NCBI GenBank assembly: GCA_012026655.1
Contig: JAAILG010001346.1
Location: 1-64,000, forward strand
From: Hydrolagus affinis
Taxonomy: Eukaryota
Length of the DNA stretch: 64,000 bases
Reading direction: 5' to 3'
Shown in pieces: positions 8,581 to 58,249 of this stretch. How positions within the stretch are numbered: the first letter of the stretch is position 1; each line of letters begins with the position of its first letter. Below the pieces are notes generated by a model. That model did not search any database and was not told the origin of the DNA. It saw only the letters and a list, made by a program, of their open reading frames with translations. Made by a program: the position numbers and the translations under genes.

Positions 8581-9419
8581 CATACAGAGTGACACAATGA
8601 ACTGTGGATTTGCTTGATTTACATAGAATACGTTCTGTTCTTCAGTTCTGAACGTGATGAATAATTGACTTGTTTATGGGGCTGAACGACTCCCGTGTAT
8701 CGCTTCAAGATTCCCACACTTTTGTTCCACATTTGATTACCTGCGTGGGAAAGGGTTTAGTAAACATAGTGTTAATAACTTCTGCATTTTTTTGTTTTGA
8801 AAAGTGCAAAAAAAAAGCAAGACACGAACCTGTGTGTACTGTAAGGCTTAAAGTACTGTCTGCACAACCTCCCAGATAGATCAAAAACTTATTGCTCTTG
8901 ACAGCGACAAGAAGGGAGAGTTAGCCGTAGGCCTCTGACGGATCATCCGCAGAGCTGCTGTGTCTGTAAAGGATGGCTGGTGGCTAATTGTCTATTTTGA
9001 GGATGAGCAGGTAAGGAAAGGCCTCTCTGCTGACATTTGGTTAATTCCTGGTTGCCTGTGGTTTATTGCACATCCTGGATATTTGCTAGCAGGAAGGTTT
9101 GGCTTTTTCACATATGTAACATGTCATATGTAATCAAACAAAAAAGCGCTGTTTGAAATTGTAGCATTATCGGTTGAAATGGATTCTGATTGCATAGATG
9201 TGACATGCTGCCTATGGGTGCTGTCCTTTATCTCCACTGGCTTTGATGCTCGTGGTTAACTCTTTGAATGCCAGTGTTCAGTACAGCCCGCAGAGGGCTC
9301 CCGAGACTTGAATTTCAAGATCGACTTGAATTGATTTAGTTTTTCCAACGTTAACTCTCTTCTACCTTACTGATCAATATTTCCTACCTTCAGGATTGTT
9401 CAGTTTCACCCTCCCGCCC

Positions 9420-10200
9420 CCCCCTTACAAATTCAACTCTCCGAACCTGTCCGCAACCTAGGCGTCAGATTCGACCCCCAACTGTCCTTCCTCTCCACAT
9501 CCGGTCCATTACCAGCACTGCCTTCTACCACTTCCGACGGATCGCCTGTCTCCAGCAATACCTCACCTCAAAAGCCGCTGAAACCTTGGTCCGTGCCTTT
9601 GTCACCTCTTGGCTGGACTATTGCAACGCCCTCCTCTCCGGTCTCCCCTCCACCACAGGTCTCCCCTCCACCACAATCCACAAAATCCAGCTAATCCAAA
9701 ACTCTGCCGCCTGCATACTCACCCGCTCTAAGCTTCGCTCCCCCATTACCCCAGTCCTTGCCAGACTTCACTGGCTCCCTATCCCAGAGAGGATCGACTT
9801 CAAGATCCTCACCCTTGTTTTCAAATCCCTCCACTCCTCTGCACCCTCCTACCTTTCTGATCTCCTCTCCCCCCAACCCAGCACCCATTGCCTTCGCTCC
9901 TCTGGGTCTGGCCTCCTCCATGTCCCCCCGAATCCTCCGCTCCACCCTCGGCACCCATGCCTTCAGCCACTACGCCCCGAGGCTCTGGAACTCCCTTCCT
10001 CACTCCTTTCGCCTCGCTCCCCTCTCTTCCCAGTTTCAGGTCACAGCTGAAGACCTTTCTCTTCGACCGCGCTTTTGGTCACCTTTCTGTCCCTGGTCAC
10101 CTTTCTGCCCAGCTTGGTACCCGGATTCCGCTATTGTAAAGCACTCTGAGACGCCGTCCGGCATGGAGGGCGCTATATAAATCAAAGTTGTTGTAGTTGC
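9420..10200 (+). mobile_element. LINE-2 3' fragment (ORF2 C-terminus and tail), frameshifted
   Basis: Peptides LVRAFVTSWLDYCNALLSGLP, IQNSAA, HWLPIPERIDFKIL, APSYLSDLL, APRLWNSLP; tail gcgctatataaatcaaagttgttg. Confidence 0.92.
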
Positions 10201-17575: not shown

Positions 17576-18176
17576 GTGTGTATTAAAAAAAATTCCCCAA
17601 ATAATTTCAATTCAAATTAACGTGTTTTCCTGCGCAAACGGAGAGGAGCGTTGGTTGATCTTATTCCTTCTAATCTCCGGTAGTGGTGAGATATTGATGA
17701 CAGGTAAAGGTGTCTGGTGTCTCCAGGTGTCTCCAATTATCTTCTAAGGATAGGGATAGATCACCCTGGTTAAGTGACCTGCTTAATTGAAAGTTTGAAA
17801 TGTTACACTTGTCAACAATCTTATCTTTGAGAGGATGGTGAGAGGGATAACAATACAACACATTTATATAAGCGCCTTTCACGTCGGGAGGATGTCCGAA
17901 GGTTTTGCACATTGTTTTTTCCTTGCGTTTTCGAGCGAGAAACTAGTTTCCTCTGTCGGATTTAGTGTTTGAATTTATAAATCGCCCACAAATGTAAAGT
18001 CAATTCGCTTTGCAGTATATTCTGTGAAGCGCTTTGAGACATCTAGAAGACATGAATGTCAAATGTAACGATTATTATTAAAATAGTCGTTCTGAAGTTT
18101 GTTCAGATTTTTTTTTCAAAAAGCGACGAAATCTGTTCATTTCACGGCTTTGAAATAATTGCCGTTTGAATTGCAG

Positions 18177-19073
18177 GTCACCAGCGAAAAGACGAGCCTC
18201 CTACAATCATAATGACCAGGGCTCCGCTCTTCAGAAATTCTCGTAACCCAGGGAAAGGTGGAAATGTTGGTGGCAGAAGATCCTCAACAACTATTACGCA
18301 GTATTTCAATAAAAATCCTTTGACTTCGACACCTGTACAGAGATCACCACCACAGTTGTACTTGCCAACTGTTGACGTCACTCAAGATTGCGCTGATGAT
18401 CAGAACATTGTGTGTAACTCTGTTAAACTGGGACACCAAACAATACCGAGAACTTCAGCTCACTGTGAGGCAGCGCTAGAGAAAAATCTAAATGCACCCG
18501 CAATTGATAACACAGAGAATATACTGTATACTGTAGAATGTGAATCCCAGGCACAGCAAATCATGTATGACAGTGTGGGAAATTCTTACGATAGTTCTAC
18601 AGCGGTATCACCCTCTCCTGTTTCAGCGTCAGTTTGTGAGTGTGAGGCCGAGGTAGTAGATAAAGAAGAGGATGAGACATTGTTTTATACCCCTGAGCTT
18701 TTTGATGAGGATCTAGAGGAAGACTATTTAGAGGAAGCAAAGCGAGCTAGCCCACAGATAACTGACGATGCTACTCTTGAACCTGAGAACGTAAAAAACG
18801 ATAGTGTCAAACTGTTTCAGAGTACCAATGGAGAGCTCAGTCACCTTGACAGTGCAGCAAGATCCAATGAGAAAGATATGGCGGGTTCAATTATCAGAGG
18901 GGATTATCTGGATTGCGGCCCGCCAGCTAAAGGTGACAATGTACCTAAATTGTCTGCGCTGATAGATAGCGAAGAGGCTGCCAGCTCGCATTCTCAGCGA
19001 GTGGATGAGCCAACAGAAAGTGACCAAAAACGATCAAAGAGAAAACATAGGCTGAGCAGATCAAGAAATAAAG
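18177..19073 (+). CDS. BRIP1: BRIP1 exon (~human terminal exon 20): disordered region with a PIP/RIR-like motif (TITQYF) and TopBP1-type motif (DETLFYTPELFD). If unspliced, it reads on to a stop at 19127-19129.
   Basis: Acceptor ttgcag|GT; same frame as ORF 18212..19129; FYTPELF matches human YFTPELY. Phase-1 donor AAAG|gtacta at 19074. Confidence 0.9.
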
Positions 19074-19350
19074 GTACTACAGGCATTGTTGTCTTAAATG
19101 AAGACAGCTACCGGTTTGATCATGGTTGACTCCTGCTTTAACAACAATTTTACAATAATTAATAGCAATTATCATTATTAATGCCCATCTGTGATCACTT
19201 AAGCATATTGTTTGATAAAGTCTGCCTTTTTTTTCACCCACAAATTATACAGCGCATTCACTTCACAGTGTATTCTGTGAAGCGCTTTGAGACGTCTCAA
19301 AGACATGATGAGGTGCTGTATCAAAAAGCCATCTGAAGAGGTCATATCAG

Positions 19351-19356
19351 AATAAA
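19351..19356 (+). terminator. Candidate intronic poly(A) signal for a short BRIP1 isoform
   Basis: AATAAA about 220 nt after the read-through stop at 19129, followed by GU-rich ctttggtgtttgt. Confidence 0.35.
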
Positions 19357-20211
19357 GTACCTTTGGTGTTTGTAACAGCCAATTTGTTGTTTATAGCAAT
19401 GTTTTTTTTAAGAAAGCACTGCCTACCAGTATTTCAACTCCAAAGAAGTTCTTAAATTTACTTTTTTAATATCAGTGTAAATGGTAAAACACTGAAACAA
19501 TATAATTTGTTCACTCAATGTTACCTGCACAGTAAAGTGCATCAAATATTTATTGGCCTCGGACATTAGTTGTGAAAATAAATGGTTAGGTGGGGGGGGC
19601 AAAACCTTACTTAGGTGCAGTAATCTCTTCTGCTTAAAGTTTGTACAAGGTATATGGTTTATAAGTGAAATACACTATCAATGAAAGTTGTTGTTTTATG
19701 GTTCTTTGCTTTCTGAGATCTGTGTTTTATTTTGGATTGTGGAGATCCTGAAATGTTTAAAAAGTAATCTCAGTCACCACTTCTCCTTCCACATATCTCT
19801 CTCCGTCTCCCCCCCACCCACTGCTCCAGAGAATCAAAAGTACCCTACCATTCCATAGCAGAACGTGTGTTTCCAACACGCCACTTGAATTAAACCTTTA
19901 CAAATGTCTAGTACCTTGCTGGATCACCTATATATATAACCCTGTAACCATAAAATTATGATTGTTCTCATAAATAACTTTTATTAAATATTGGTTCTGA
20001 GTTATTTCTTTCGTAAGCAGAAACTCGCACTAAGATCTTTGGCGAGTATTGATATGCATCCGTTCATTGTCAAAAACCTTCAGTATCTGTAAGTGTTACA
20101 TCTGGCCTGCTCGCAACATCTATAGTCGATTCACTTTATAATATGTTCTGTGAAGCGCTTTGAGTCTGTACCAAATGCAGGGAATATTATTATTATATTT
20201 TCTTTTCTCAG

Positions 20212-21225
20212 GCAATAATAATTCATCAGCATTGTCGAGATGGAATCACCAAAGCGATCGCCCCAACATGGAGATTAGGATAGTGTCAAAACTTGGTGTC
20301 TCGAAACAAGAAGCCAGTTCAGGCTGTTCAGAGAGAGAAACTAGCCATCACATGCTGAGAGTACATCCGAGAGATAAAAGGAAGGTTATGAAACATGCTG
20401 ATGTTGAAAGTCGAGTAAACAAGCAGAAAGATTGTACAAAGGGATCAAGTGAGAGTAAACACAGTCAAAAAGACCAGGACGATTTTTTTAAACGGAGCGA
20501 ACAAAAAAGCAATAAACACAAGCCAAGGTATCTGTCGGGTGAAGAAGCTACACTGCTCAACATTGCCCAGGAGGGAAGCGTGGGAATGAATAACAATAAG
20601 GAAAATGTAGAGAAATGTAAGCTTGTTTTGTCAGAGGTGACTGATCACACAGTAATTCAAAATACTGGAAGCCCAAGGACAGAGAGTGTAGATTTCAATG
20701 TGATGAAATATAGGTTAAGAAACAGACGGGCAAAAAAGCTCTGCCACAGATTGGGTCAAAGCACAACTCGGGTAGAAAAACAATTAAATGGTGCTCAGAC
20801 TGGTGAAACAAAGGACGAAACTTCGCCCAGTAAAACGTCACCCAAAGTGGTCCTTTTCAGCCAGTGCGGAGATCAGTTTACAAAACCTTGCGAAGTGCCT
20901 GTGTTAGACTCAAAACAATCAGCCAAGAGCAAAAGAGGAGCAAAATCTAAGACTGCGAGCTGTGCGTGTCATGGGGACGAATATGGAAAGTCCAAAGCAA
21001 CCGCGGTTCAGTTGGAAGTTCTAACAGCAGAGGAATATCCTTCCCCTGTGCACGCAATTCTTTTACAATGTGATAACATAGATGCTTTGGGAATAGGTGT
21101 CCAGGGTAATGGACAACCTCACAATAACGTAAATCAAATTTTCCATCTAGATAACGATGTATCAGTTGTAGAGAACAGTTTATCAGCTCTCACGAAGTTC
21201 ATCTCTGATACAAAAATCTGTTCAG
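20212..21225 (+). CDS. BRIP1: Putative additional BRIP1 exon (338 codons, S/K/E-rich linker)
   Basis: Acceptor ttttcttttctcag|GC and donor TCAG|gtaagg; 1014 bp with no stop (inside ORF 20160..21431); phase 1-1 matches the donor at 19074. Confidence 0.8.
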
Positions 21226-21278
21226 GTAAGGAAGTTAGCTGTAGCTCGCTCCATAAGTATGTGTACATATATATTATG

Positions 21279-21580
21279 TATCCTGTAGCTCAGTGGTTGG
21301 AGCGTTCGCTTTACAAGTGTGAGATCCATGTTCGAATCCAGGCAGGTCAGAGCAAAACCTTAGGCAAGTTTCCTTACTCCACACAAACACCTAATAATAA
21401 TTCCTCTCCTCCCCCAGAAAACCCACACTAATAAAATTGGTCATTTTCATCCACGACTGTTTGTGGGTCACTGCTATGCGCAATTGGCTGCCGCAGTGAT
21501 GTGGATTAAATAATAATAATATAATCCTTGCATTTGGTGTAACGCCTTATCGTTTCATCGAGATGTCTTAAATCACATTG
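21279..21580 (+). mobile_element. SINE head and core on +, followed by an inverted tail fragment
   Basis: tgtagctcagtggttggagc...gttcgaatcc...gcaattggctgcc, then aatccttgcatttgg. Confidence 0.8.
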
Positions 21581-21758
21581 TTAGATCTTCTGCAGGTTTT
21601 CTTGATTTAGTGAGAAGAAAAAAAAACACTTTCCTTGGGTGGTTATATGAATGGGGTAGATGGGATGGAGCGGGTCCTCAATGATCGAAGGAAAACTTAA
21701 TAAAGTGACTGACTGGCCTTTTATACTTCCTTATCAATAATCCACCTTGTTGTTCCAG

Positions 21759-21847
21759 GGTTAAAGATAAAAACAACAAGAAACAGCTACCGAAAAGCTA
21801 AAGGGAAGAGGGTTAGTCAAAAAAGGAGGATTCTGCAGGATGATCCG
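21759..21847 (+). CDS. BRIP1: Putative additional BRIP1 exon, basic/NLS-like: GLKIKTTRNSYRKAKGKRVSQKRRILQDDP
   Basis: Acceptor tgttgttccag|GG and donor CCG|gtaata; 89 bp, open, phase 1 to 0. Confidence 0.65.
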
Positions 21848-22603
21848 GTAATACGTGATTTTTACTGGCAGTAAAACATTTCAACATGACATAGAACAAA
21901 AACAACAAAAAATTGGATTTATACAGCTCTCTCCACGCCGGACGGCGTCTCAGAGCACAGAGTGCCCACTCGCTCTTCAAATTGGTGGGTGAGCTTTCAG
22001 TCACTCTGCCCCCGCTCTCCGGTTCTCCGTTCCGTCACCTGGCTCCCTCCCTGTCTATCTTCCAAACCGGCCTTTTAATCTCCTTGAAAGTGCATTTGGC
22101 CACCTTCCCCCTTCCCAGTCCCACTCCCATCCCTACCCAGCTCGGGCTCCCAAAGTGTGTGAAGCATTTTGAGATGACATTGCAATACGATATGAAAGGC
22201 ACAAGTAATGTATTGTTATTTGTTTTATTTGTTGGTAAGTTATAATAAATATCGCAATCTCGAGAATAATAGATACCTAGAATGCATTACTAATTAATCG
22301 TATGGTCACGCAGAATAGGCTCAAGGGTTATGAATAACTGTTGTTTGGATCCTAAGACTCTAAACTATGAGCATAAATTCAATAGCTCTCTGATTTTGGT
22401 ATCTCTGAGTTTAAATATAATCTTATTTACTGTGAATGTTTATGCAGTGAGTTTACTTGGTCTCTCATCAAATTAGTAATTAGCTCTCAGTGCCACTTGA
22501 CTCCAAGATGTGTTTACGACAACTGCTGATTCTCAGTGATTAACGGGATATGAGAGTCAGCCTAGACTGTATGCTAATCTCAGGATTTCTCTTCATTTTT
22601 CAG

Positions 22604-22682
22604 CAGAGGCAAAGACTTCAGCCATGCCAACTTGGATTGTTTTGTGTTTCTTGTGGTGCTGAATTATTAGCAGACGCCCAAG
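22604..22682 (+). CDS. BRIP1: Putative additional BRIP1 exon with first CxxC: QRQRLQPCQLGLFCVSCGAELLADAQG
   Basis: NAGNAG acceptor ttcatttttcag|cag and strong donor CAAG|gtaaga; phase 0 to 1; open. Confidence 0.72.
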
Positions 22683-23068
22683 GTAAGATCAACAGCCCGA
22701 TGGCGGTCTAAAAAGAGTTATTTGGAACCAAAGGTAATACTTTGATTTAATATAATAATGTCTCAGACATCTGCCAATTATCACAGGAAATGGGACAGAA
22801 CACTCCTGTCATCAAGGGGAGAGGTAGATATGTACATGTGGAAATGGCCTGCAGGTGATGTTGATATTTTTAATGAAATGTACCTTAAAATTAGCATCGG
22901 AAACAGCGCCTTGGGACATCCACCTGACGTGAAAGGCACTATACAAATGTATTTTCTATTGTATTTTGTACTGTGTATCTATTATCTTGTTTTGAAGATA
23001 ATCCTGTGTGCGGAGGCCTGACGGAAAACTTGCCACGTGTTTTAAACCCAAGTGAAATTTGTTTACAG

Positions 23069-23296
23069 GCTTGATGATGAGAGCTCCCTGTATCAGAGAC
23101 AGTATTGCCAAGCTTAAGGCAGTTTTCCCAAACACAACTAGAAAATCAAAGACTCCAAATCTCCACTGCTATTGTCAAAATCAACCAGCTCAGGTCACAG
23201 GCTCCGAGAACATTCTACTAGTTGTGGAAGATGAAAGAGGAATATCCTACCTGAAGGAAAGAACGCAGCCCTATGAAGTCACAGTAATCAGCAAAG
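23069..23296 (+). CDS. BRIP1: Putative additional BRIP1 exon: GLMMRAPCIRDSIAKLKAVF...NILLVVEDERGISYLKERTQPYEVTVISK
   Basis: Acceptor tttgtttacag|GC and donor AAAG|gtataa; 228 bp, phase 1-1; frame of ORF 23059..23373. Confidence 0.72.
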
Positions 23297-23881
23297 GTAT
23301 AAAAACAGTTAAACCTCACATTATGAACTCATTCACTTGCAACAGACTCGGTCTTGTGTTATTCTGTAAATGATGCAGAATTCTAATAAGGTGATGTATG
23401 ACAAAGTTGAATTGTTGATAAGTTGATTTTACAACAACAGCAAAATTACATTTATAGAGCGCCTTTCATGGAGGACATTCCAAGGCGCTGTTACTTCTAG
23501 CTAAATGACTAAGAAGTCATCATTTAGAGATACGTCTTAATTTTGCCAAACAATAATCCTGCATAATTCTGAATGTTTAGAATGGAAATTCTTAAATTCA
23601 CTCCATTTTGAAAAAAAATTCTGCAAGTTCTTTTAAGGCTGAAACTTAAATTGCAATCTAAATTCAACAACGGGCGCTGTAAAATGCCGAATAAAGTAGA
23701 GTAAATCTAGACCTGCATAGATTTTTCTCCTACTTGTTTATTTTTTGATGTATTGTTTGAGAACTGTTATATTAACTTGTAAAATAACTCGAATCTCTTT
23801 TGTAAATATGAAATAGGCAATAGCCAGAATTATGATGTCTCAGCACTGAATGTCACATTTTTGTTTTTCTGTTCTTGAAAG

Positions 23882-24042
23882 GACCTCGGCAAACAGGACT
23901 AGCATTAAATGCCATGTGGAATTCACAAGAATCTTCTCTAACCACCTATTTACAATGCAGAAACTGTGTCAGTCAGTTGACTCCTCACTGTTCATTGATA
24001 GGTGCTGAAATAATACAGCTAAAAAATGTTCGTCGACCAAAG
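23882..24042 (+). CDS. BRIP1: Putative additional BRIP1 exon with second CxxC: GPRQTGLALNAMWNSQESSLTTYLQCRNCVSQLTPHCSLIGAEIIQLKNVRRPK; terminal exon unresolved
   Basis: Long pyrimidine tract then ttgaaag|GA; donor AAG|gtaggg; 161 bp open, phase 1 to 0. Confidence 0.7.
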
Positions 24043-27000
24043 GTAGGGAATTCACATTGAAGGAAACCTGGCCATCATTTATAGTACTTATAGATTTGTG
24101 GTACTTTTTCAAGGGGTTGTTCAAATATATAGAAAATCACGTTAAATAGCTTTGTCTGGGTATTTCAATTCCTTGCCAATCATTGTTTTTCAAATTTCCA
24201 CTATAAAAATAATAAGACTAACCCTTACATCTGATACTGGGAGAATGCGTTAAAATTCAGCAAACATGTTTTACGAAAGACTGGGTTAAGTGGTCTGAAT
24301 CACTGCATTTGGGATTTGCCATTAATTAAAAGAAATAAAAATGTTTTGGGTTTAAAAAGAAAACATTTGCAGGCTGAGAGCATTGGAAATGAGAAAAACT
24401 CAATCTGCAAGATTGAAGTCAGCTTTACGTTCCTGCCCTAAATGTTAATAAAGAAATATGTGGTTTAATCTAGTTAATGCTTTTGACCATTGATCCAGTT
24501 TATTTTAAATTTCATCATATGTAATGTTGGATTAACCTAGTGATAGTGGATTTATGGTCATGCAATTCACTCCTATTAAGTGTGCAACAAAATTGTGAAA
24601 ACATCAGTATTTTTTTTATGAGAAACATATACCTTACAAAGCATGCTGAAGGAAAACAGTGTTATATTAACCCTAATGTAGCTATCAAGTCACCTATCTT
24701 ACCATTCCCACACTTGGTTCTGAACACTGATATAATTGATAGAGGAATAATTCATTGTTGAAGGAGTTTTAGTAGAAAAATGTTCTCAGAATACAAACGG
24801 GTGTTGTTTGAATTTGTTTAACGTTCTATAGATGTGAAAGTGGATTGACTGCTGAAAACAACGTTCACTCGTGAAGTAAATAGCAATGAGCCCAGTTTTC
24901 ACAATAGTCAGTTACACTATGTACACTACCTTGAACCCCCAAACATATGCGTGCGAGTAAGGTGATTTAATAATGTGCTGCATTGTTGTATTGCTGTGGA
25001 GGGAGTTGTATTAGACAGTCAATGTCAGGAATCCGGAAGGTTGCAAAGTCAAAAATAAGTGGTTTCCAAAGGTGTTGATTTCCATACAGCAGGTGTTTTG
25101 TGTTACGTTGTGTGATCAGCTGCTTTGCGTTCGACTTACTTTGTGCACTTATAAAGCATAGAAATAATAACACTCTCTGCCCACGGCAGGTCTTAACTTT
25201 TACTGTTTCCTGCCTTTTACAACGGAGGCCAAAAGTTTAAAATGTTCAGTTTAGTTCTGATATCACCACCTTTGTTCACATATTATTTTGGGGGGGATTA
25301 CTTTGCGCTAAGACCTGTGTTTGTGCTTTTTAAAAACTTTTGTTCTTTATGTGCAAACGATTGAATCGAAAATCGGTTTTGTATGAAGGGACAGTAAATT
25401 GGTAGTGACGCATCCAAGGTGTGTACAGAACTTTGTCTCTGTGTTGATGACTGACAGGATTTCTGTAGAGTTCTGTACCGCAGGGTGTGAATTAGTCAAC
25501 TGACTGCTTTAAAGCTTCGAGAGGAAAACCTTTAATCTTTTGCCAATTCCTTTCAGAATAACAAGTCAAAGTGTCTTTAAATCCATCTGTGGAATATGTT
25601 TGCAATTGCCTTTTCTGAGTTGCCTTTTCAACTCTGTTAACCCCTTGACTGCTATTGATACGTTTCATACTGCTGTGTGTGTTTTTTTGTTTAGTAGAGC
25701 GATTCAAAGGGGCCAAACAGAGAGAGGAAAATATAGTAATATTTAATAATAAAAATGCCCAAAATAGATCATTCCTGAATATAAATTCATAAGACAGTAC
25801 TGTATTTTACAGTAATATACAGTGCGTAGTGTTGTATTCCCTATTAGTTGAGCCTCTGTCACTCTGAAAGCACCAACTCTTGCTGAGAGTACAATTCCTT
25901 GGGTGCTAGCAAACACTGGTATTTCACACAAGCAGCTGTTATTCCCACTGAACCTGAACAGTGACTGCCAGCAGGCTGTTTGTTTACCCTGAAGAGCTTT
26001 ATTGCAATAGTGTTCTGACCTTCGGCTGAGATGTTAATTGGGATCTTGCTAGACTATGTCCAATGCCCTGCTCTTTCGCCACACATGTTTAATATTCCCA
26101 GTCAGTCTCTGTCTGAGTCTCATTGAAACACCCTGGCTTTCAAATTCTGCCTGTCCAGTTTCTGAGCTCTGAGTATTTCACATCTCCACAACGCTCTTTG
26201 TGGGGAGAGACTTCCTGATCTCAGCTCTGACTGTCCTTGGTCCTGAATCACTCTCTTGCCTCTGCTGGTCCAGTGCAGTGAGGGTAGGGGGAAAGACAGC
26301 AATGCTGTCAATCTGAATAATCAATCTGGCCTGACAGGCAGCTGACAAAAAAAAACATTCTCCAGATATGCAACACATGATCTCTGCCAATATCAGATCC
26401 TATGGCTTCACAAGATTGGATTGAATGAAGAAAGCCCTTTGGCTCGTCTTGCCAACCTTCCTGCCTGGCATCTGTACCAATTGTGAATGAAATGAGAATC
26501 TTAAATTTATGAAATCTAACTGGCAGTCAGACTGAAATATTGAGAAGTTTATATTGTTTGCTTCCTGTAGGTTACTAAAGGACATTACACAATAACAACA
26601 ACAGCAAAGAGTAGTTCTGCCCCTGACACTGGCAGACTGGCATTTAGCTGACTAGGAACTGATCCTGCAATGATTTGTTTAGGATTCTCTTATCAAATTC
26701 TGCACTCTGCTTTAATTGAGGCTCTTAGTAATGGGCACCATCCATCACATCAGAGAAAATGGTAGGAATTAACTCAAAAACATCATTGTCAGAAGCTGAA
26801 CTCATCAACAGATTGTTTTTGAAAATACTGTACGTGGAAACCTTTAATTTCCATAAGCCCATAGGGTTTGCGGTCGTCAGTTATTGGAAAGCAACTTTTA
26901 ATAATATAACTTGTCCTCATTTTGCTCTTAATTTTTCAGGATCTATTTCTAATACATTTTAAAAGCCTTGTTGGCATTTTAAAAACATTAAATGTAAACT

Positions 27001-33445: not shown

Positions 33446-34289
33446 TGTCAGTTGGGACCATACCTCCAATATGAATGATGTACATAAGTCAGTTATGTCA
33501 AACGTGCAAAAGTCTTGTCAATCCTAATTTATGTAAAGTTACGTATCAGTCGGATTTGACACTACTTAACACACATAACAAACACACGAGTACTGAACTT
33601 GTCGGTCACATTAAGGGTTTCGACCTGAAAATTTTCAGATCCATCATTTTCCTCAAAACACCATGTTTCCATGTACATTTCAAGCAGTGGCATACATCTG
33701 TAGATGTGAAGAGGCAAAAATGATTGAACCCATCCAGCAAGAACCATTTCAAAATGTTCCCTCCAGCACTGATTCACGCTGACAGATAATGGCTATGGTT
33801 AGACATTTAATGCAGGTGGGATGTGTACTCAGAAAACACCTTAAAAGCAAATAAGGCCTATTCTTGCCAAAGAAAATTTCTGTTCAAGCAGATAATTCCG
33901 TCTCTGAATACAGGTATTGTGTGACAGGATTCCCCTTGTTTCATTAGAAAATTGGTCTGTGCAATATGTACTGTGTGCTTTTTTTAAAAAAAACACACAT
34001 TTACGACCTTCAACAAGAGGATTTATAATTGCTAATTTGGCAGCTAGAAGGTAAGGAGCTGAATCAAACTCCAGCTTCTGGTTTTTAAAGACATTGCCTA
34101 ATGGAATTTATGACCATATTGTTTATACTTCTAAATACTGTACAGAATGTGGGGTGTTTCGAAGGGCTTCAGTGGTTAGAGAACTAACTACCAACAAAAT
34201 TGACAAGAAATTTGGAAGTGTGGCTGTAATTGCCCCATCTTTGTCCGCTCCCTCCACACCTTCGAATTCGGCCTGAAGACCAATCCGTT

Positions 34290-34600
34290 TTAATCTTGCT
34301 TAACAGTACCCAATGCCTTTGCTCCACCAGGTCTGGCCTCCTCCTTGTCCCCCTAATCCTCCGCTGCACTATCGGCGGCCATGCCTTAAGCCACTACACA
34401 CCGAGGCTTTGGAACTTGCTTCCTCATACCCTTCACCTCTCCCCCTCTCTTCCTACTTTCAGGTCTCGGCTAAAGATCTTTCTTTTCGACCGCGCTTTCG
34501 GTCACCTTCTTCCCCTTTCCCTCGACTCAGGGTCAGACTCCGCCATTGTGACTCTAACCCACGTGAAGAATGCTACATAAATGCAAAATTGTTATAGCTG
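34290..34600 (+). mobile_element. LINE-2 3' fragment of the same family as 9420-10200
   Basis: GGHALSHYTPRLWNLLP...FRSRLKIFLFDRAF, then tail. Confidence 0.85.
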
Positions 34601-39225: not shown

Positions 39226-40489
39226 TGTGAGTCATATGGAAGGGCTTCGGCCTTGTCAACATTTCAACTGGAGAAAGTTAGCTCTCATCCAGGACTCGAT
39301 GTCTGACAAACAATCTCAGGTCAGCGGTGGAGCAGGAGTTGAGGGTGGAGCCAGAGAGATAGAGTTGATTGTCATCTGAATGCACTGACAGAAGTGTCAG
39401 CCCTAGATAGTAAGAGTTTTTCAAAGTCCTGAGGTAGAGCTTGAATCCACAACCTTCTGACTCATTGTAAGAGTGTTACCAATTAAGCAAGGCTGGTAGC
39501 TTTCATATAAAAACACATATAGGAAAGTGTGTATAAAACATTCACAAATGTGAATGTCTTTGGAAACACATTCACAGATTCTTCATGATTTGCGACAAGG
39601 ATTATGATGTGAAAATAATTCCTCGATTGTGTTACTAATTAATAATAATAATAATCCTTACATATGATATAGCGCTGAATCAAGTCTTCGAGACGTCTCA
39701 AAAGCGCTTCAGAGAATTGACTATCATTCGTGGGCGATACGGGCAGCCAATTACCCACAGCAGTGTCCCACAAACAATCGTGGTTTGAAGTGAACAATTT
39801 CAATTTTGTTTTGTGGCATTGTGGCATCCTCCCAATCAGCTGTGATTCAATACGAGTTTTGGCAGTGGGTATTTTACATGTGGTCTTTTAACAGCTCACA
39901 GAAAGAAAAGGCAGTAAGCTCCTTGGACTTGGGCTGATACCCAGAGGTGGAATACAGTGTTCTCACACACTGTGACACCTCATCTCCCACAGACAACATT
40001 TGGCCATCAAGGGAACACTGTTGGTGGAGTCAACAGAAAGTTTGGCAGTGGGAACTATACTGCAGGACCTTATGCGCGCAGTAATATTTTACAGCACTGT
40101 AAATCATTACTGCAAGTTCAGATGTAATATTCCTAAATAAATGTGCTTAATAGAACAGGTTCCAAAGAGGCTTTTTTTTCTGTTTTTCTCTCTCTCTCTC
40201 TCTCTCGCTCTCTCTAATGGTGTTTAGTGAATCACTCGCTGTTCTGAGTTCACCGCTGTCACTGTTTTTGATTAGGGCTGAACTGACTTGTGCACTTTCG
40301 AGTTGCAGCTCTCGACTGTTGCATCCTTTGTACTCGTTGGCACAGAAAATATCAAGGACTTTGTTGCGTTGGCAGAGGTCTACGGATTCGCTGGCACATG
40401 TATGTGTTGTGGCAAAATACTTTGGAATAAACAGAATCAAACGTATTGCGAAATACAGTCCTATCGTTTATACCGAGGTCGCAGGGAAT

Positions 40490-40695
40490 GAGCGGACCTT
40501 GTCGACTTAGGGGTTTTTCGGGATAAACGAGCGCACGGTCGAATCGGAAGGTCTTCAGACGTGACCTGAAGATGGGGAATGAAGGGGCAAGGCGGAGAGA
40601 CAAAAGAAGAGTGTTGCAGAGTTTTGGGGGCGCAGAGGCTACAAGTGCAGCCTGCAATGGAGGAGTGGGGGACACAAGGAGCACGCAGAATGCAG
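40490..40695 (-). mobile_element. LINE-2 3' fragment
   Basis: APPKLCNTL...FRSRLKTFRFDRA on the minus strand. Confidence 0.7.
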
Positions 40696-42414
40696 AAGGC
40701 GTCCACTTATTGACTGGATTGAAACTGAAAGATTTGAAAATGCTGCAGAGTCTGTTGGAAGCGTTTGCATGTACAGTATTTCACATCAATGCTGAGAATT
40801 AGAAGCGTTCACTCGCATGCATTTGATATAAGCTACTGTAAATAAAGTTGATGTGTTATTTAAGAGCAGACCGCGTAAGAGCACAACCGTGTGCGTTTTG
40901 GATTAGCGCCTGTAGCTCATAATCGTTTGCTTCCACTTCTTTCGGCGGTGGCTCGGAATGAGCAGCAATGCTCTGCGATCCCTCCTCACACATGCTAAAT
41001 ACTTCTCTGCAAGTCAGGTGCCGAATCCTGTCACTGTTTGACTTCTGCACCATTGTTTTCAGGTGTCTCGGCATCTTGTTGACAGATGATATCCTCATCT
41101 GGCAGGGCTGCAATGCGCTTCTTTCTCACTTGCATCCACGTTCACAGCGGGAACCGTGAACTCTTTTGGCAAACCAAGAGCTTGGTACGTTATCTGATCT
41201 CCGCAGTCTTCTTCAGCCATGACAGGCGTGGGCTGCGAATCCACGCAAGCCACGGAAGTTATCGAGGCAAGAGAGGGAAAGGGAATGCAGGGGGATGGTA
41301 TCAGGGATGAGTGTGTACAGTCAATCGACTTCACGGGGTATCCTGTGGAGCGCTTTGAGACTTCTGAAAGACATGATAAGGCGCTGTCTCAAACGCAAGG
41401 GTTACTTCTGAGTGGTTTTGGCCTATGAGCGGAGACGGCAGGAACCGGGAGCTTTTGTTTTTTTAGCTGAAGCTGAAACCGGTTGAGAGGTGACCTAAAA
41501 GACGACTTTGAAATGATGACGGATTTTGACAAAATCAAAAGGGGACAAATGATTCCCACTGGACTCGGTGAGTCAAACCAAACTTATCCATGTTGTTTTC
41601 TGTGTGTGTTTGTTTTTCTCTCTCCCTCCACCCCCCCTCCTCCCCCCCAAAGCCGTGCGTTTTATGTTGTGTACACTATAGCCCCCATAATTTCAACAAA
41701 ACTATGGCCCATAAACAGGAGGCAAATGGCATCATTGCAGAAAGCAAACAAAGGAACCTCCTGCGAGACGTGTTTTGTGTATCTCTAAACTATTCTTTAT
41801 CTACCCTGGCATCTCTGGTCCCACAGGCAGACTGATATCTGTGCAATCGCTTTGATACATGCCAAGCACCTCAGAAGATTGAAAAAAAACACTGTCTGCA
41901 TCACATTTTATATCTCTGCAGAGCATTGCATGTTAAGTGCAAGAGTCAGACACTGTCTTGATAACTTCCTGCTTCACTTGTTGTATCAGTATATTGTTTG
42001 TGCAGTAGACACTATATGTACACAGTTACTTCTGAGTGTTTTCCGATCGCACGGAGGGATAAGCGCCGCAAATCTGAGACACAAATCAGAATGATCAGTG
42101 CTTGGCTCAGATCGGACCTGCATTTCTCTACGAAACGGACAAAGATTCATGGAAGTGGAATGCACTATTTTCTGAAAAGTTTTAACTCTTGAGTTTAACA
42201 AAAGAAGTGCTATCACTTGCCCTGCCAAACCTAATGTGGAGCATTCGGTAACTTCTAAGACTTGTTTATCAAAGGAACACATCCCTTTTATTTTAGCTTT
42301 TGTGTGCAACAGGATTTTGTTCACAAAAAAATTAAACACTAAGCTAGAGTTCCAATGTTATCTCACAGACAAGTGCTCGCAGTACGTCATTTGTCCTGTT
42401 TGTGAAAAAAAAGT

Positions 42415-46700: not shown

Positions 46701-46875
46701 GAGATAGCCAATGTGCGAGACCAAGTGGCTGTAAGATGCCATAGATTCACACTAGAGACCAGAGCTGCCAACCAGTACGTTTTTGCCATATTTAGTACGG
46801 TAAATTGAAGTAAATACGTTAGTACGATTTTTCTTGTTAAAATACGTTGTTTGGAAAATCCGAAATGTTACATGC

Positions 46876-47140
46876 TCTGTCTGTCTGTCTCTCCTTCTCT
46901 ATGTCTCTCTCTTTCTCAGTCTCTCTCTGTGTCTCTCTCTCTTTCTGTGTCTCTCTCTCTCTTTCTGTGTCTCTTTCCCTCTCTCTGTCTGTCTCGGTCG
47001 CTCTCTCTTTCTCTCTCTCTCTGCTGCTCTCTGTATCTCTCTCTTTCTGTATCTCTGTCTCTCTGTCTGACTCTCTGGCTGTTACAATCTCACTCACAGT
47101 CTCTCTCTCTGTCTTTTTCTTTCTCTTTAACTCTCTCTCC
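46876..47140. repeat. Compound (CT)n/(CTGT)n microsatellite
   Basis: Directly visible; explains the spurious ORFs in 46834-47194. Confidence 0.95.
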
Positions 47141-47574
47141 TGCCTTCAATTGCAGTGCTACCTTATGCCGTCGCTGATACACTGTAAATGTTAGCGCTAG
47201 GCTAGGCGCTAGACATTACCTGGAACAATTTTTTTCATGTACGGAAACACAGTAGGGACCTCCCGCTTAACGCAATTTTTGCTTAACGAGAGGTTTTTGA
47301 AGTCCCATTTTACTTGGCATCTTTTCGCGCTGTAATTTTTTCGTTAAGTACCAATAGGTTCTGGGCGAAATACTTTTTTTTACTACAAAATACTGTTTTT
47401 AGCTTTCAGGAGTACTTATTTTTGTTAAAAAAAAAAGGTTGGCAGCTCTGAGAGACACTCATTTACTCCCATTAATTTCTGGTTAGGTTTTTTCATATCT
47501 AGAATTGAAGCTCACCGTTGTGCAATGTTGTTCAATGAAACATTTCATGATGATATTCATACATTCTTACAGTC

Positions 47575-51534: not shown

Positions 51535-51815
51535 AACAACAACAACAAAATTACATTTATAGAGCCTTTCAGGTCGGGAAGACATCCCAAGGTGCTGAAT
51601 AGTCAGGTCAGGACTCGAGCAAGGAAGAGGGGCAGGGTAGTGGGGAGAGGCGGGAGAGAGTTAGGAGGGGAGGGAAAGAATTGGCAGAAGGCATAGTCGA
51701 AGAGGAGGGTCTTGAGAGGGTAGAGTGGCTGAAAGCCTGTTCGCCGATGGTAGGGCAGGTCGGGCGGAGGACATGGAGCAGGCCGGAGCCTGCTGAACAG
51801 AGGGGGCGGGCAAGT
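51535..51815 (-). mobile_element. LINE-2 3' fragment
   Basis: SAGSGLLHV...TIGEQAFS, with a (caa)n tail on the plus strand. Confidence 0.75.
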
Positions 51816-53218
51816 TCAAACCTCTCCTTTGATATCCAATTAAGTCTGATCAAAAAACAACTTTAAATAAATGATTCTAATAACATGTAAAATGTGTAGT
51901 TTGGGCTCGGTTGAGCATTCTCACCTCAAGGTCAGGCTTCCAAGCCTCACTTCTCAGGAACTAAATCCATAACACAGACCAGACCATCCATGCAATATAA
52001 CAATGAGGGAGTTCAGCGGTGGGGTGGAAAACGGCTGTAGAAATAGCGCTCCGACCAAAGAATATGAAGTGCTTCTCTTGCGAAATACAGGAGAGGATTC
52101 GCCCACAAAATGTCATCGATTTAAGTTACATTGTGCGCTGTGAATGCCGTGAGGCGTCTAGAAGACGTGATTTGTGCTTTTCCCTCCGATCCGTGCCTCT
52201 GGTGGCTTCTCTAAAGCTCCAGGACTTTTCCATTCGGAGACGACTGCAAATGTGTTATCTCAAGTTCATCATAAAGTGTGTTTGGCTGCCGCGTTCCGGC
52301 CACCAAACACACACTCGGTACACTTCACAGTATATCCCGTGAGGCACTCTGGGACGTCATTCCAACGTGAAAGGCGCTGTACAAACATCATTTTGTTGTT
52401 GCCTTGAAGGCGTGATAAAATGCAAGGATTAGTATTATTGTTGTTTGGAGAAATCTTGAGAATTTCATATTTTCTCCCTCTTGCAGCTTCGAAGTGGTTT
52501 CCGAAAGCATGACCCGTATCGCCCGCATAGTGCTAATCAGTCGTGGGCCCAAAGGGCTAATTATTATTTTTTTTTTACTAATTGTTCTGCTTACTGGGTT
52601 TTACGGCTCGCGTGTGACTAACTGCTCGCGTGTGACTAACAGGCTCGCTTTGTACAGGCAGAGGTTAGCCAGTAGCAAACTAAAAGAAAATCCCAAATGT
52701 GTGGACGTAAATTATGAAAGATGCAGTGATGCCTGTGTCACAATCGATCTCAGTGAGTTATAAAGACGGGTGATTTTGTGACGGGGGGAACTTTCCCACA
52801 AGTCGCTGCTGTGTTATTTCCCTAGGCATTAAAATAATCTGAACTGAATCCCATTGACACAGACACGTTTCAAACCCCAATATCAATGTCCGGAGGAGTA
52901 ATGTACTGTTTGAACAGTTCTTTCGTGATGTTCTTTTAAACACCTTTGCTCCCGAGTTTGCACAGAGAAAGATTGATGCGGCTGCTCAACATTTCCGAGT
53001 GTCCCAATTCCATTCTTCTCTATCTCACTCTTCATTAATTCCTACGGTTTTTTTTTGCTCAACCAGGTGTCTGACACATTTATAAACCCCTTGCGGTATT
53101 CAACGGTTTAACACTCTCTAGTTGCAATGAGAAATGCATGTCTAGAGTTCCCTGGTAATTATAATAAGTGGACTCGCACTGCACTTGCCTTGTGAGTGAA
53201 GAACACATGCGAAGATTT

Positions 53219-57459: not shown

Positions 57460-58067
57460 TCAGCTGTCTGTCCAGGTTGTCACAGTGCCCAGGCCCGAGT
57501 GGTACTGGCCAGGTAATGACGATAGACTCTGTGAGAAGAGCAACTCCCGAGTGCTCTGGGTGTGAGTTGTCGACGGGTGTCTCTCGTGGGGGAGGAGAGG
57601 GACCCTGTCCCGGGGGGAGCAGGCTGCCCCCCCCGGCCCTCGGCCCCTGGCTTGGTGCTGAGGCGGTGAGTAGCCGCTGTACTGGGGGTCGCAGGGCGGC
57701 TGGGGGCTCTGTGCGGGCAAACCGGGCAGGTGAGGCATCATGGCCGTGGTGGTGAAGTGAGCTGAGAAGTGCTGGTAAGGGACGGTGTCCATGGTCTGAA
57801 CCCCGCAACTGCCATAGGGAGTCACGGGAGCCCACATGTTACAGCCCAGGGCTTGGGAATGGTCTTCGTGGCCCGCGGCCCCTCCCGCCTCGCCCCCCGG
57901 CCCCGAGAACATGCAGGCGTCCCTCAGGTCGGCTTCGCTGCGGTACGGCGGGCTCAGCACCGGCTGCTCGTAGGGCGGGGGCCGGAAATAGTGCTCGTCT
58001 CCCAGCGAGGAGGAGGGGGCTTCCAGGAACGGGCGTTTGCAGGTCAGCTCGGGGTGGCCGTGGGCTT
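57460..58067 (-). CDS. TBX4: TBX4 last coding exon: AHGHPELTCKRPFLEAPSSSLGDEHYFRPPPYEQ...QYHSGLGTVTTWTDS*
   Basis: Acceptor cctttcag|AA; open to TGA at 57462-57460; C-terminus matches human TBX4 QYHSGMGTVENWTDG rather than TBX5. Confidence 0.96.
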
Positions 58068-58249
58068 CTGAAAGGTGAAAAGAGAGTCAGCGATGGTTGC
58101 TATCTCACTACCCTCTGCGTGAAGTAATTCCTTCTCAATTTTCTCTTAAAACTCCCTCATTGCTCTTATGGTTACAGACTCCTCAACTAGTGGAAACAAA
58201 CGATTACAAACTTGTTTCAGGCCAGCCTCCACCCCCCCTCCCGCCCTTA

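What the first reader, a model, noticed from the sequence alone, without database searches (positions are those of the whole stretch)
19074..24042. BRIP1/FANCJ appears to continue about 520 aa beyond the mammalian C-terminus, through five extra in-phase exons
Seen in sequence: at ...RLSRSRNKG the DNA reads AAAG|gtacta. Five stop-free exons with canonical AG/GT ends follow (20212-21225, 21759-21847, 22604-22682, 23069-23296, 23882-24042). Their phases chain exactly (1-1, 1-0, 0-1, 1-1, 1-0; 1571 nt in total). Recalled knowledge: human FANCJ ends at about ...KNKGMFPGFK in exon 20. Inference: this lineage keeps a longer, possibly ancestral FANCJ, and the mammalian end may have arisen by loss of this donor and read-through into the intron.
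Basis: partly seen in the sequence, partly recalled or inferred. Interest (0 to 1): 0.85.

Follow-up and report, generated by a model that had tools for sequence, protein, structure and literature searches.

The report
Extra coding exons downstream of BRIP1
Five real, weakly expressed coding exons lie just after the BRIP1/FANCJ gene of a shark-like fish, but the gene's usual message stops before them, so the usual protein ends much as in mammals.

Summary
All five segments have AG/GT ends, one open frame each, and phases that chain over 1571 nt. The first lies in a 425-codon open stretch, the longest in the window; 20 shuffles gave 122-193.

The reading "FANCJ continues" is not what the RNA shows. 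In three poly(A) RNA runs from one sample, reads cross the GT at 19074 with no loss of depth: 19, 20 and 21 reads at 18917, 19110 and 19168 in X3. Depth ends between 19941 (7) and 20050 (0). So the usual mRNA stops at TGA 19127-19129, 17 codons past ...NKG, with a 3'UTR of about 0.8-0.9 kb.

The five exons carry same-strand reads at about 2% of BRIP1's depth. Introns free of SINE spikes had none. No 19073/20212 junction was listed, but repeat-derived joints crowded the junction table.

I lean towards a rare long isoform, made when a weak donor competes with a poly(A) site (0.4). A separate neighbouring gene is nearly as likely (0.35). The big exon has no relative among 1.84 billion proteins. 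The model is still open at 24042. The scan noted this stretch once before (s1-906292).

The parts
18177..19073 (+). Last coding exon of BRIP1/FANCJ up to the weak GT (phase 1 to 1, 897 nt). It holds an acidic YTPELFDED stretch and ends in ...KRKHRLSRSRNKG.
   Evidence: open stretch 18170-19126; acceptor AG at 18175-18176. RNA depth is 18-27 in X3. The gene's identity comes from upstream exons.
19074..19129 (+). Read-through tail: 17 further codons after the Gly codon that spans the donor, then stop TGA at 19127-19129. This is the end of the usual protein.
   Evidence: translation. X3 has 20 reads at 19110 and 21 at 19168, against 19 at 18917, so there is no drop at the donor.
19130..19990 (+). 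3'UTR of the usual BRIP1 mRNA. It has AATAAA at 19351 and 19577 and ATTAAA at 19889 and 19983. The RNA 3' ends lie about 19,941-20,050.
   Evidence: for the signals. for X3 depth: 19 at 19906, 17 at 19920, 7 at 19941, 0 at 20050; five molecules begin at 19944. The reads carry locus-specific variants (19528 in 11/11; 1-nt deletion at 19592 in 15/19).
20116..20211 (+). SINE fragment whose AT/T-rich tail runs into the polypyrimidine tract of the acceptor at 20212.
   Evidence: family D1, copy 20116-20181. (depth spike in bin 19979-20175). (acceptor score 9.9, 99.4th percentile of all AG by a crude score).
20212..21225 (+). Big coding exon of 337 whole codons. It is Ser/Lys/Asn/Glu-rich and probably disordered. 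An in-frame ATG with good context lies at 20268. An out-of-frame ATG at 20240 opens a 12-codon uORF.
   Evidence: RNA reads reach depth 0-2 in X3. An allele or relative (X1) keeps the frame: 11 nonsynonymous and 6 synonymous changes, no stop, and one 18-nt in-frame insertion.
21759..21847 (+). Exon 2: a basic, NLS-like stretch (…RKAKGKRVSQKRR…).
   Evidence: Two X3 reads at 21787 carry the locus-specific variant. Depth is 0 at intron places 21648 and 21715.
22604..22682 (+). Exon 3: the first CxxC knuckle (FCVSCGAEL). A tandem CAGCAG acceptor lies at 22601-22606.
   Evidence: Pfam Zn_Ribbon_1 E=0.016, 15.4 bits, below the cut-off of 25. PDB best hit is the LysW zinc ribbon, E=1.7. Its bin has depth 2.11 in X3, with a few reads of the other orientation.
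23069..23296 (+). Exon 4: 76 codons, with HCYC and a hydrophobic strand-like stretch (ILLVVEDERGISYL).
   Evidence: Depth 0.95 in X3. Only a weak PAXX match, E=0.49.
23882..24042 (+). Exon 5: the second CxxC knuckle (LQCRNC). It ends in phase 0 at donor AAG|GTAGGG with no stop, so further exons are expected downstream.
   Evidence: Depth is 1.47 in X3 and 0 in the next two bins. PDB best hit is an RPB9/RPC10 zinc ribbon, E=2.1.

Best explanation
The window holds the 3' half of a BRIP1/FANCJ gene from a cartilaginous-fish-like genome, convergent with a TBX4-like gene.

Shown: the usual BRIP1 mRNA does not splice at 19073. It reads through that weak GT, stops at TGA 19127-19129 and is cleaved and polyadenylated about 19,941-20,050. 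The usual protein therefore ends in ...NKG plus a 17-residue tail.

Shown: the five downstream segments are real exons on the same strand. The first is a true coding exon. All carry poly(A) RNA reads, and the introns free of SINE spikes carry none.

Inferred: they are alternative 3' exons of BRIP1. They would be reached only when the weak donor at 19073 is used before the poly(A) site about 0.9 kb downstream (a composite terminal exon, with splicing competing against polyadenylation). The result would be a rare long FANCJ, a few per cent of transcripts in this sample. Its tail would be about 370 residues of basic, serine-rich, probably disordered linker. A cysteine-rich module of at least 155 residues with two CxxC knuckles would follow. 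The 3' end of this model is still missing.
For: Gene identity: the exon near 1980-2105 hits FANCJ chain 9ej9_A at E=4.5e-20, against about 5e-6 for XPD. Helicase_C_2 matches on three exons, only two above Pfam's cut-off.

Read-through: X3 depth is 19 at 18917, 20 at 19110, 21 at 19168, 19 at 19906, 7 at 19941 and 0 at 20050. X2 and X4 show the same shape at lower depth. Five molecules begin at 19944. ATTAAA lies at 19889 and 19983.

Real exons: the open stretch is 425 codons, against 122-193 in shuffles, with codon periodicity p=3e-4. X3 reads fall in 6 of 8 exon-bearing bins free of SINE spikes and in 0 of 5 intron-only bins (one-sided p=0.016). A sixth such intron bin, 22146-22342, was left out of the test and is also 0. 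Reads at 20438, 21218, 21787, 21834 and 21839 carry locus-specific variants.

Link to BRIP1: the strand is the same and the frame fits. The acceptor at 20212 is the best of the set, at the 99.4th percentile of all AG, as expected for an internal exon. The frame is open from 20154, before the first ATG at 20268, and an out-of-frame ATG at 20240 lies in between. The weak donor (score -0.56) fits a site that usually loses to polyadenylation. The few reads on the exons follow BRIP1's level across runs: about 0, 9 and 1 read-equivalents in X2, X3 and X4. That fits proportionality to BRIP1 (p=0.67) and not equal expression (p=0.001). This is rough, and all runs are from one sample.
Against: No 19073/20212 junction was listed. 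The table shows only the best-supported joints, 904 were not shown, and all those shown are SINE-derived.

The depth does not drop at the donor. The big exon has only about 2% of the last exon's depth (0.41 against 22.8 in X3).

The donor is at the 86th percentile of all GT in the window. Six other phase-1 GTs in the same exon score higher, so the in-frame fit is weak evidence.

The in-frame ATG at 20268 has a good context (A at -3, G at +4), as a start codon of a separate gene would.

No relative of the big exon was found in 1.84 billion representative proteins or in the PDB's full-length FANCJ. Exons 3-5 also have no FANCJ hit.

Constraint is weak: dN/dS is about 0.48 from only 17 changes.

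Only one RNA sample was available.
Confidence: 0.4

Rival explanations
1. The five exons, plus missing 3' exons, are a separate weakly expressed gene that starts about 0.1-0.3 kb after BRIP1's poly(A) site. Translation would start at ATG 20268. The product would be an orphan or fast-evolving nuclear protein with a disordered N-terminal part, a basic NLS-like stretch and a Cys-rich C-terminal module.
For: BRIP1 transcripts end before 20050, where depth is 0 in all three runs. ATG 20268 has a good context. The donor at 19073 is weak and not special among the phase-1 GTs. CpG observed/expected is 0.83 at 20001-20500, against 0.24-0.33 just upstream. Nothing in the exons resembles FANCJ.
Against: A very strong acceptor sits exactly at the start of the open frame. 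The frame is open for 38 codons before the ATG, and an out-of-frame ATG at 20240 precedes it. The reads follow BRIP1's level across runs. No pile of 5' ends was listed. Passages of PMC6669545 describe brip1 and tbx4 as neighbours in teleosts with no gene named between them. No homologous stand-alone protein was found.
Confidence: 0.35
2. One reading: the long protein is this lineage's main and ancestral FANCJ, and mammals lost it by donor loss and read-through.
For: The frames chain. By recall only, the human protein ends at about the same distance after the conserved TPEL-type motif.
Against: The read-through, short-tail form is already the dominant mRNA here. The big exon has about 2% of the last exon's depth. 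The big exon has no relative in any protein of the 1.84-billion library, which has no length limit.
Confidence: 0.05
3. The exons are transcribed but not functional as protein: a young or decaying open frame, or spliced noise downstream of BRIP1.
For: Expression is very low. No homologues were found. Divergence from X1 in the big exon (17 listed changes in 1014 nt) is no lower than in the flanking non-coding DNA (11 in 760 nt), though the list may be incomplete. Exons 2-5 show no codon periodicity.
Against: A 425-codon open frame with codon-position bias is far beyond chance. The frame is kept in X1, where the only exonic indel is 18 nt. Four further exons are each open only in the frame the chain needs.
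Confidence: 0.12

Closest known systems
Canonical vertebrate BRIP1/FANCJ terminal exon (human exon 20, by recall)
   Same: A long, poorly conserved acidic and basic tail exon follows the helicase core. The usual mRNA ends the protein shortly after a basic ...NKG-type stretch and has its own 3'UTR.
   Different: Here the last Gly codon overlaps a GT that could act as a splice donor, and in-frame coding exons follow 1.1 kb downstream. The similarity of the C-terminus to human could not be shown by sequence.
RTEL1, the sister Fe-S helicase, with its long isoform carrying a C-terminal C4C4 RING
   Same: Alternative 3' splicing gives RTEL1 forms of 1219 and 1300 residues, and only the longer carries a Cys-rich zinc module (passages of PMC11344278). 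If the link to BRIP1 holds, this locus would follow the same logic.
   Different: No sequence similarity to a RING was seen. The two CxxC knuckles here are about 110 residues apart, and the join to the helicase is unproven.
Composite terminal exons, where intronic polyadenylation competes with splicing (for example the secreted and membrane forms of IgM heavy chain; recalled textbook knowledge)
   Same: A weak 5' splice site is followed by an in-frame stop, poly(A) signals and observed RNA 3' ends inside the would-be intron.
   Different: The spliced alternative has not been seen here.
Zinc-ribbon knuckles (Pfam Zn_Ribbon_1 PF13240; LysW, RPB9/RPC10)
   Same: FCVSCGAEL and LQCRNC look like zinc-ribbon knuckles and give the top weak hits.
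   Different: All hits are below threshold (15.4 bits against a cut-off of 25; E=1.7 and 2.1). The spacing is not typical. The joined domain was not searched.
PAXX (C9orf142), XRCC4-like head domain
   Same: Residues 9-46 of exon 4 align to PAXX residues 56-93. All 5 PDB hits are PAXX chains.
   Different: E=0.49-0.95. No Pfam PAXX hit. Exons 3 and 5 do not hit PAXX. No PAXX-like acidic tail motif was found downstream. I treat this as chance until tested.

Membership tests
BRIP1/FANCJ (gene identity of the upstream exons) | The helicase C-terminal domain exons match FANCJ better than XPD, CHL1 or RTEL1-type paralogues. | tested here: met
   9ej9_A FANCJ residues 752-794 at E=4.5e-20, against XPD/RAD3/CHL1 at 5e-6 to 2e-5. 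Helicase_C_2 at E=1.4e-13 and 4.1e-6 (both above the cut-off of 25.3 bits); a third exon scores only 13.9 bits (E=0.059), below it.
BRIP1/FANCJ (the five exons as part of its transcript) | RNA that joins 19073 to 20212. | tested here: inconclusive
   no such joint is listed, but only the best-supported joints are shown and 904 are hidden. Depth does not fall at the donor. The big exon has about 2% of the last exon's depth.
BRIP1/FANCJ (the extension as a conserved part of the family) | Relatives of the extension exist in other FANCJ proteins. | tested here: not met
   0 hits for the big exon in 1.84 billion representatives, with no length limit; no hit to the full-length FANCJ chain in the PDB. 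Exons 2-5 could not be searched against long proteins.
Composite terminal exon (splicing against polyadenylation) | A weak 5' splice site with a stop, poly(A) signals and RNA 3' ends inside the downstream intron. | tested here: met
   (donor score -0.56, 86th percentile of all GT; ATTAAA at 19889 and 19983). (depth 19 to 7 to 0 between 19906 and 20050; five molecules begin at 19944).
Composite terminal exon (splicing against polyadenylation) | A spliced alternative product from the same promoter. | tested here: inconclusive
   There is only indirect support: the reads on the exons follow BRIP1's level across three runs of one sample.
Zinc ribbon (Pfam PF13240) | A score above Pfam's gathering cut-off. 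| tested here: not met
   15.4 bits against a cut-off of 25, and exon 3 only. The domain is split over three exons, and the joined peptide was not searched.
PAXX / XRCC4-like | Significant sequence or profile similarity over the head domain. | tested here: not met
   E=0.49; no Pfam hit; the neighbouring exons do not hit PAXX.
Independent protein-coding gene | Its own transcription start between BRIP1's poly(A) site and ATG 20268. | not testable with these tools
The ATG context is good.

The most novel reading that the evidence does not exclude
Jawed vertebrates may originally have had a second, long FANCJ isoform. It would be made by splicing from a donor at the very point where the mammalian protein now ends. 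It would carry a nuclear-targeting linker and a C-terminal zinc-binding module, parallel to the RING-bearing long isoform of the sister helicase RTEL1. Cartilaginous fishes would keep it as a rare or tissue-restricted form, and mammals would have kept only the read-through end.
Probability: 0.1. Interest if true: 0.7.

Novelty: new variant of a known kind. Interest (0 to 1): 0.4.

Why it matters
FANCJ's C-terminal tail is where partner binding and regulation take place (by recall: BRCA1 and TopBP1 binding, and modification of the last lysine).

A second isoform that swaps the short tail for a linker plus a Cys-rich module would be a new way to regulate this repair helicase. It would also explain why the protein's end overlaps a GT that could act as a splice donor.

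If the exons are instead a separate gene, they define an unannotated protein without known relatives. It would sit in the BRIP1-TBX4 interval, which is otherwise studied for limb enhancers.

The practical result stands in both cases. Gene models for this lineage should not extend the main BRIP1 product through these exons without junction evidence.

Tried and rejected
Tandem duplication of BRIP1's last exon: rejected. BLASTP of the two exons gave a best E of 0.25, and the only repeats nearby are SINE pieces.

Transposon or viral open frame: rejected. There are no Pfam hits and no hit in 1.84 billion proteins.

Homologue searches gave nothing usable:
- The big exon against the representative library.
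- BRIP1's last exon against the word-indexed library, which sees only proteins of 165-527 aa (829 candidates, none scored).
- ESM Atlas with exon 4 (best 0.80, a bacterial cluster, at the level of noise).
- The scan's own notes, by sequence.

PAXX lead: not backed by exons 3 or 5, by Pfam, or by a scan for a tail motif.

Check of the human C-terminus: the PDB's FANCJ chain did not align to the last exon or its tail.

Completing the model downstream of 24042: a crude splice-site and open-frame scan of 24043-56500 gave 42 candidates, none convincing. It was abandoned.

dN/dS from X1 has too few changes to decide.

Literature: three searches found no paper on a long FANCJ in fishes. They were BRIP1+shark+C-terminal (9 papers, listing only). 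FANCJ/splice variant/C-terminal/zinc came next (12 of 4,221 listed). The third combined FANCJ/BRIP1 with cartilaginous-fish terms (12 of 2,962 listed). I read passages only of PMC6669545, PMC6328202, bioRxiv 10.1101/2025.04.20.649719 and PMC11344278. Supplements were not opened.

The joined spliced peptide was not translated as one piece, searched or folded. So the Cys-rich module, which is split over exons 3-5, was never tested as a whole.

Full report
WHAT IS IN THE SEQUENCE. The window has no N. On the + strand it carries the 3' half of BRIP1/FANCJ. Three short exons match Pfam Helicase_C_2, two of them above the cut-off. The one near 1980-2105 hits the solved FANCJ chain 9ej9_A at residues 752-794 with E=4.5e-20, against 5e-6 to 2e-5 for XPD, RAD3 and CHL1. 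The last coding exon starts at 18177 (AG at 18175-18176) and is open to 19126.

THE FIVE SEGMENTS. All five have AG/GT ends. Each is open in exactly one frame, the frame the chain needs. The lengths 1014+89+79+228+161 sum to 1571 nt, and the phases run 1-1, 1-0, 0-1, 1-1, 1-0. The fifth exon ends at a donor with no stop, so the model is unfinished. Without splicing at 19073, the frame runs 17 more codons to TGA 19127-19129.

IS IT MORE THAN CHANCE?
- The big exon lies in a 425-codon open stretch (20154-21428), the longest in the window on either strand. Twenty block shuffles gave maxima of 122-193.
- It has codon-position base bias (chi2 25, p=3e-4), of the same kind as BRIP1's own last exon (chi2 58). 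Three intron controls gave p=0.046-0.7.
- Exons 2-5 pooled show no bias (p=0.45, 183 codons), so sequence alone does not establish them.
- Against a DNA-like run of a close relative or another individual (X1, 0.53 of sampled words), the big exon has 11 nonsynonymous and 6 synonymous listed changes and no stop. With 800.7 and 210.3 sites, dN/dS is about 0.48.
- Its only indel is an in-frame 18-nt insertion, while nearby non-coding indels are 9, 1, 6, 4, 4, 3 and 1 nt.
- This is weak evidence. BRIP1's own last exon shows 5 nonsynonymous and 0 synonymous changes over the part compared.

WHAT THE RNA SAYS. Only one RNA sample was on offer: three stranded single-cell poly(A) runs of raw reads, X2-X4. 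I laid them with X1 on 18600-24500.

1. BRIP1 reads lie almost only in the first-mate-on-minus class, as expected for a + strand RNA. They cross the donor without any loss. The X3 depth along the stretch was:

| Place | X3 depth |
|---|---|
| 18917 | 19 |
| 19110 | 20 |
| 19168 | 21 |
| 19528-19800 | 11-22 |
| 19906 | 19 |
| 19920 | 17 |
| 19941 | 7 |
| 20050 | 0 |

X2 and X4 show the same shape at depths of 1-9. These reads carry variants shared with X1 at this locus (18662 in 23/23, 18854 in 18/18, 19528 in 11/11, and a 1-nt deletion at 19592 in 15/19). So they are not stray repeat reads. Five molecules begin at 19944. ATTAAA lies at 19889 and 19983. The usual mRNA therefore has the read-through stop and a 3'UTR of about 0.8-0.9 kb. 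The stretch 19074-20211 is not retained pre-mRNA either, because the transcripts end before the big exon.

2. The downstream exons carry a few reads of the same orientation. In X3, 6 of 8 exon-bearing bins free of SINE spikes have reads. None of 5 intron-only bins do (one-sided Fisher p=0.016). A sixth intron bin, 22146-22342, was left out of the test and is also 0. At single places the depth is 1-2 inside exons (20246, 20353, 20438, 21004, 21215/21218, 21787) and 0 just inside introns (21252, 21648, 21715). The bin with exon 3 also has a few reads of the other orientation, so I do not lean on its higher depth.

3. The level is low. The big exon's mean depth is 0.41 against 22.8 for BRIP1's last exon in X3, and 0.09 against 4.0 in X4, about 2% in each.

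4. No splice joint of the model was listed. This is not evidence of absence. The table keeps the best-supported joints, all 15 shown are SINE-derived, and 904 were hidden.

5. The few reads on the exons follow BRIP1's level across the runs: about 0, 9 and 1 read-equivalents in X2, X3 and X4. That fits proportionality to BRIP1 (p=0.67) and not equal expression (p=0.001). These are rough figures from binned depths of one sample.

SPLICE SITES. I used a donor frequency table recalled from memory and a crude acceptor score of my own.
- The 19073 donor scores -0.56, the 86th percentile of all GT in the window and the weakest of the six.
- The donors at 21225, 22682 and 24042 are at the 99th percentile or above.
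- The acceptor at 20212 is the strongest, at the 99.4th percentile of all AG. Part of its pyrimidine tract is the tail of a SINE fragment at 20116-20181.
- The in-frame fit to BRIP1 is weak evidence. Of 11 GT sites scoring at least -1 in the last exon's coding part, 8 are in phase 1, and 6 of these score higher than 19073.
- For a separate gene: the first in-frame ATG (20268) has A at -3 and G at +4.
- Against a separate gene: the frame is already open 38 codons upstream of that ATG, and an out-of-frame ATG at 20240 opens a 12-codon uORF across it.

WHAT THE EXONS ENCODE. The big exon is rich in Ser, Lys, Val, Asn and Glu, with 10 Cys in 337 residues. It has no Pfam family, no PDB relative and no hit at E<=0.001 among 1.84 billion representative proteins. 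It is not a copy of BRIP1's last exon. Exon 2 is basic and NLS-like. Exons 3-5 (about 155 residues) hold 9 Cys, including FCVSC and LQCRNC about 110 residues apart.

The only hits for exons 3-5 are weak:
- Zn_Ribbon_1 at 15.4 bits, below the cut-off of 25.
- LysW at E=1.7.
- An RPB9/RPC10 ribbon at E=2.1.
- PAXX at E=0.49 for exon 4; neighbouring exons, Pfam and a tail-motif scan do not support it.

Its fold is open. A Yippee/Mis18-like or zinc-ribbon fold is only my guess from the two knuckles.

LIMITS OF THE HOMOLOGY TESTS. The word-indexed protein search sees only proteins of 0.55-1.75 times the query length. Single exons therefore cannot reach a full-length FANCJ; one search found nothing for the last exon. 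No vertebrate genome collection was available. I could not check how well the protein library covers cartilaginous fishes. So the blank argues against a widely annotated, conserved extension but does not prove that relatives are absent.

EXPLANATION.
- Shown: the usual FANCJ of this animal ends by read-through of the GT at 19074, as the mammalian protein is said to. The read-through end is therefore not a mammalian novelty.
- Shown: there is a spliced, weakly expressed, same-strand coding unit just downstream.
- Inferred, at 0.4: it is an alternative 3' part of BRIP1, made when the weak donor wins over the poly(A) site 0.9 kb downstream.
- For this reading: the internal-exon-type acceptor, the open frame ahead of the ATG, the lack of room (about 0.1-0.3 kb) for a separate promoter, and the way the exon reads follow BRIP1's level.
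- Main rival, at 0.35: a separate orphan gene starting at ATG 20268.

COMPARISON WITH WHAT IS KNOWN. The nearest precedent in logic is RTEL1, the sister Fe-S helicase. [quoted passage not shown] I found no paper describing a long FANCJ in fishes (listings and passages only). Passages of PMC6669545 describe brip1 and tbx4 as neighbours in a conserved cluster in teleosts. Here a 208-codon open stretch on the minus strand at 57463-58086 looks, by recall only, like a TBX4/5 last exon; Pfam gave nothing.

VERDICT. The find is of moderate interest: a likely unannotated coding unit, and possibly a rare long FANCJ isoform. One RT-PCR or a long-read data set would settle it.

Noticed in passing
window 57463-58086 (- strand): A 208-codon open stretch, rich in Pro/Ser/Tyr and holding ...VPYQHFSAHF..., looks by recall like the last exon of TBX4/5. 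It lies in the GC-richest part of the window (0.51), convergent with BRIP1. Pfam found no family.
   Followed up: partly
window 17990-18055, 19243-19308, 20116-20181; also 21270-21520, 22860-22960, 23430-23500: Copies of a very abundant SINE family, with DNA word depth up to millions and hundreds of RNA reads in both orientations. They swamped the joint and loose-end tables. The tail of one copy supplies part of the pyrimidine tract of the acceptor at 20212.
   Followed up: partly
window 20958: The related DNA run X1 carries an 18-nt insertion inside the big exon. It is in frame and adds no stop (read by eye), and looks like a local duplication.
   Followed up: partly
window 22601-22606: A tandem CAGCAG acceptor lies at exon 3. 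The alternative acceptor three bases upstream would add one codon in frame.
   Followed up: no
window 9355-10177 (+), 34230-34594 (+), 40355-40780 (-), 51606-51862 (-): Repeated open stretches with similar Pro/Ser/Leu-rich translations (…HWLP…FKIL…). They look like fragments of one interspersed element in BRIP1's intron and in the intergenic region. This is by eye only.
   Followed up: no
window 46800-47190: A CT-rich low-complexity tract, open in several frames on both strands (translations SLSLSL.../ERERER...).
   Followed up: no
window 19073/20212, 21225/21759, 22682/23069, 23296/23882: At all four phase-1 junctions of the model, the split codon would be a glycine codon (G|GN).
   Followed up: no
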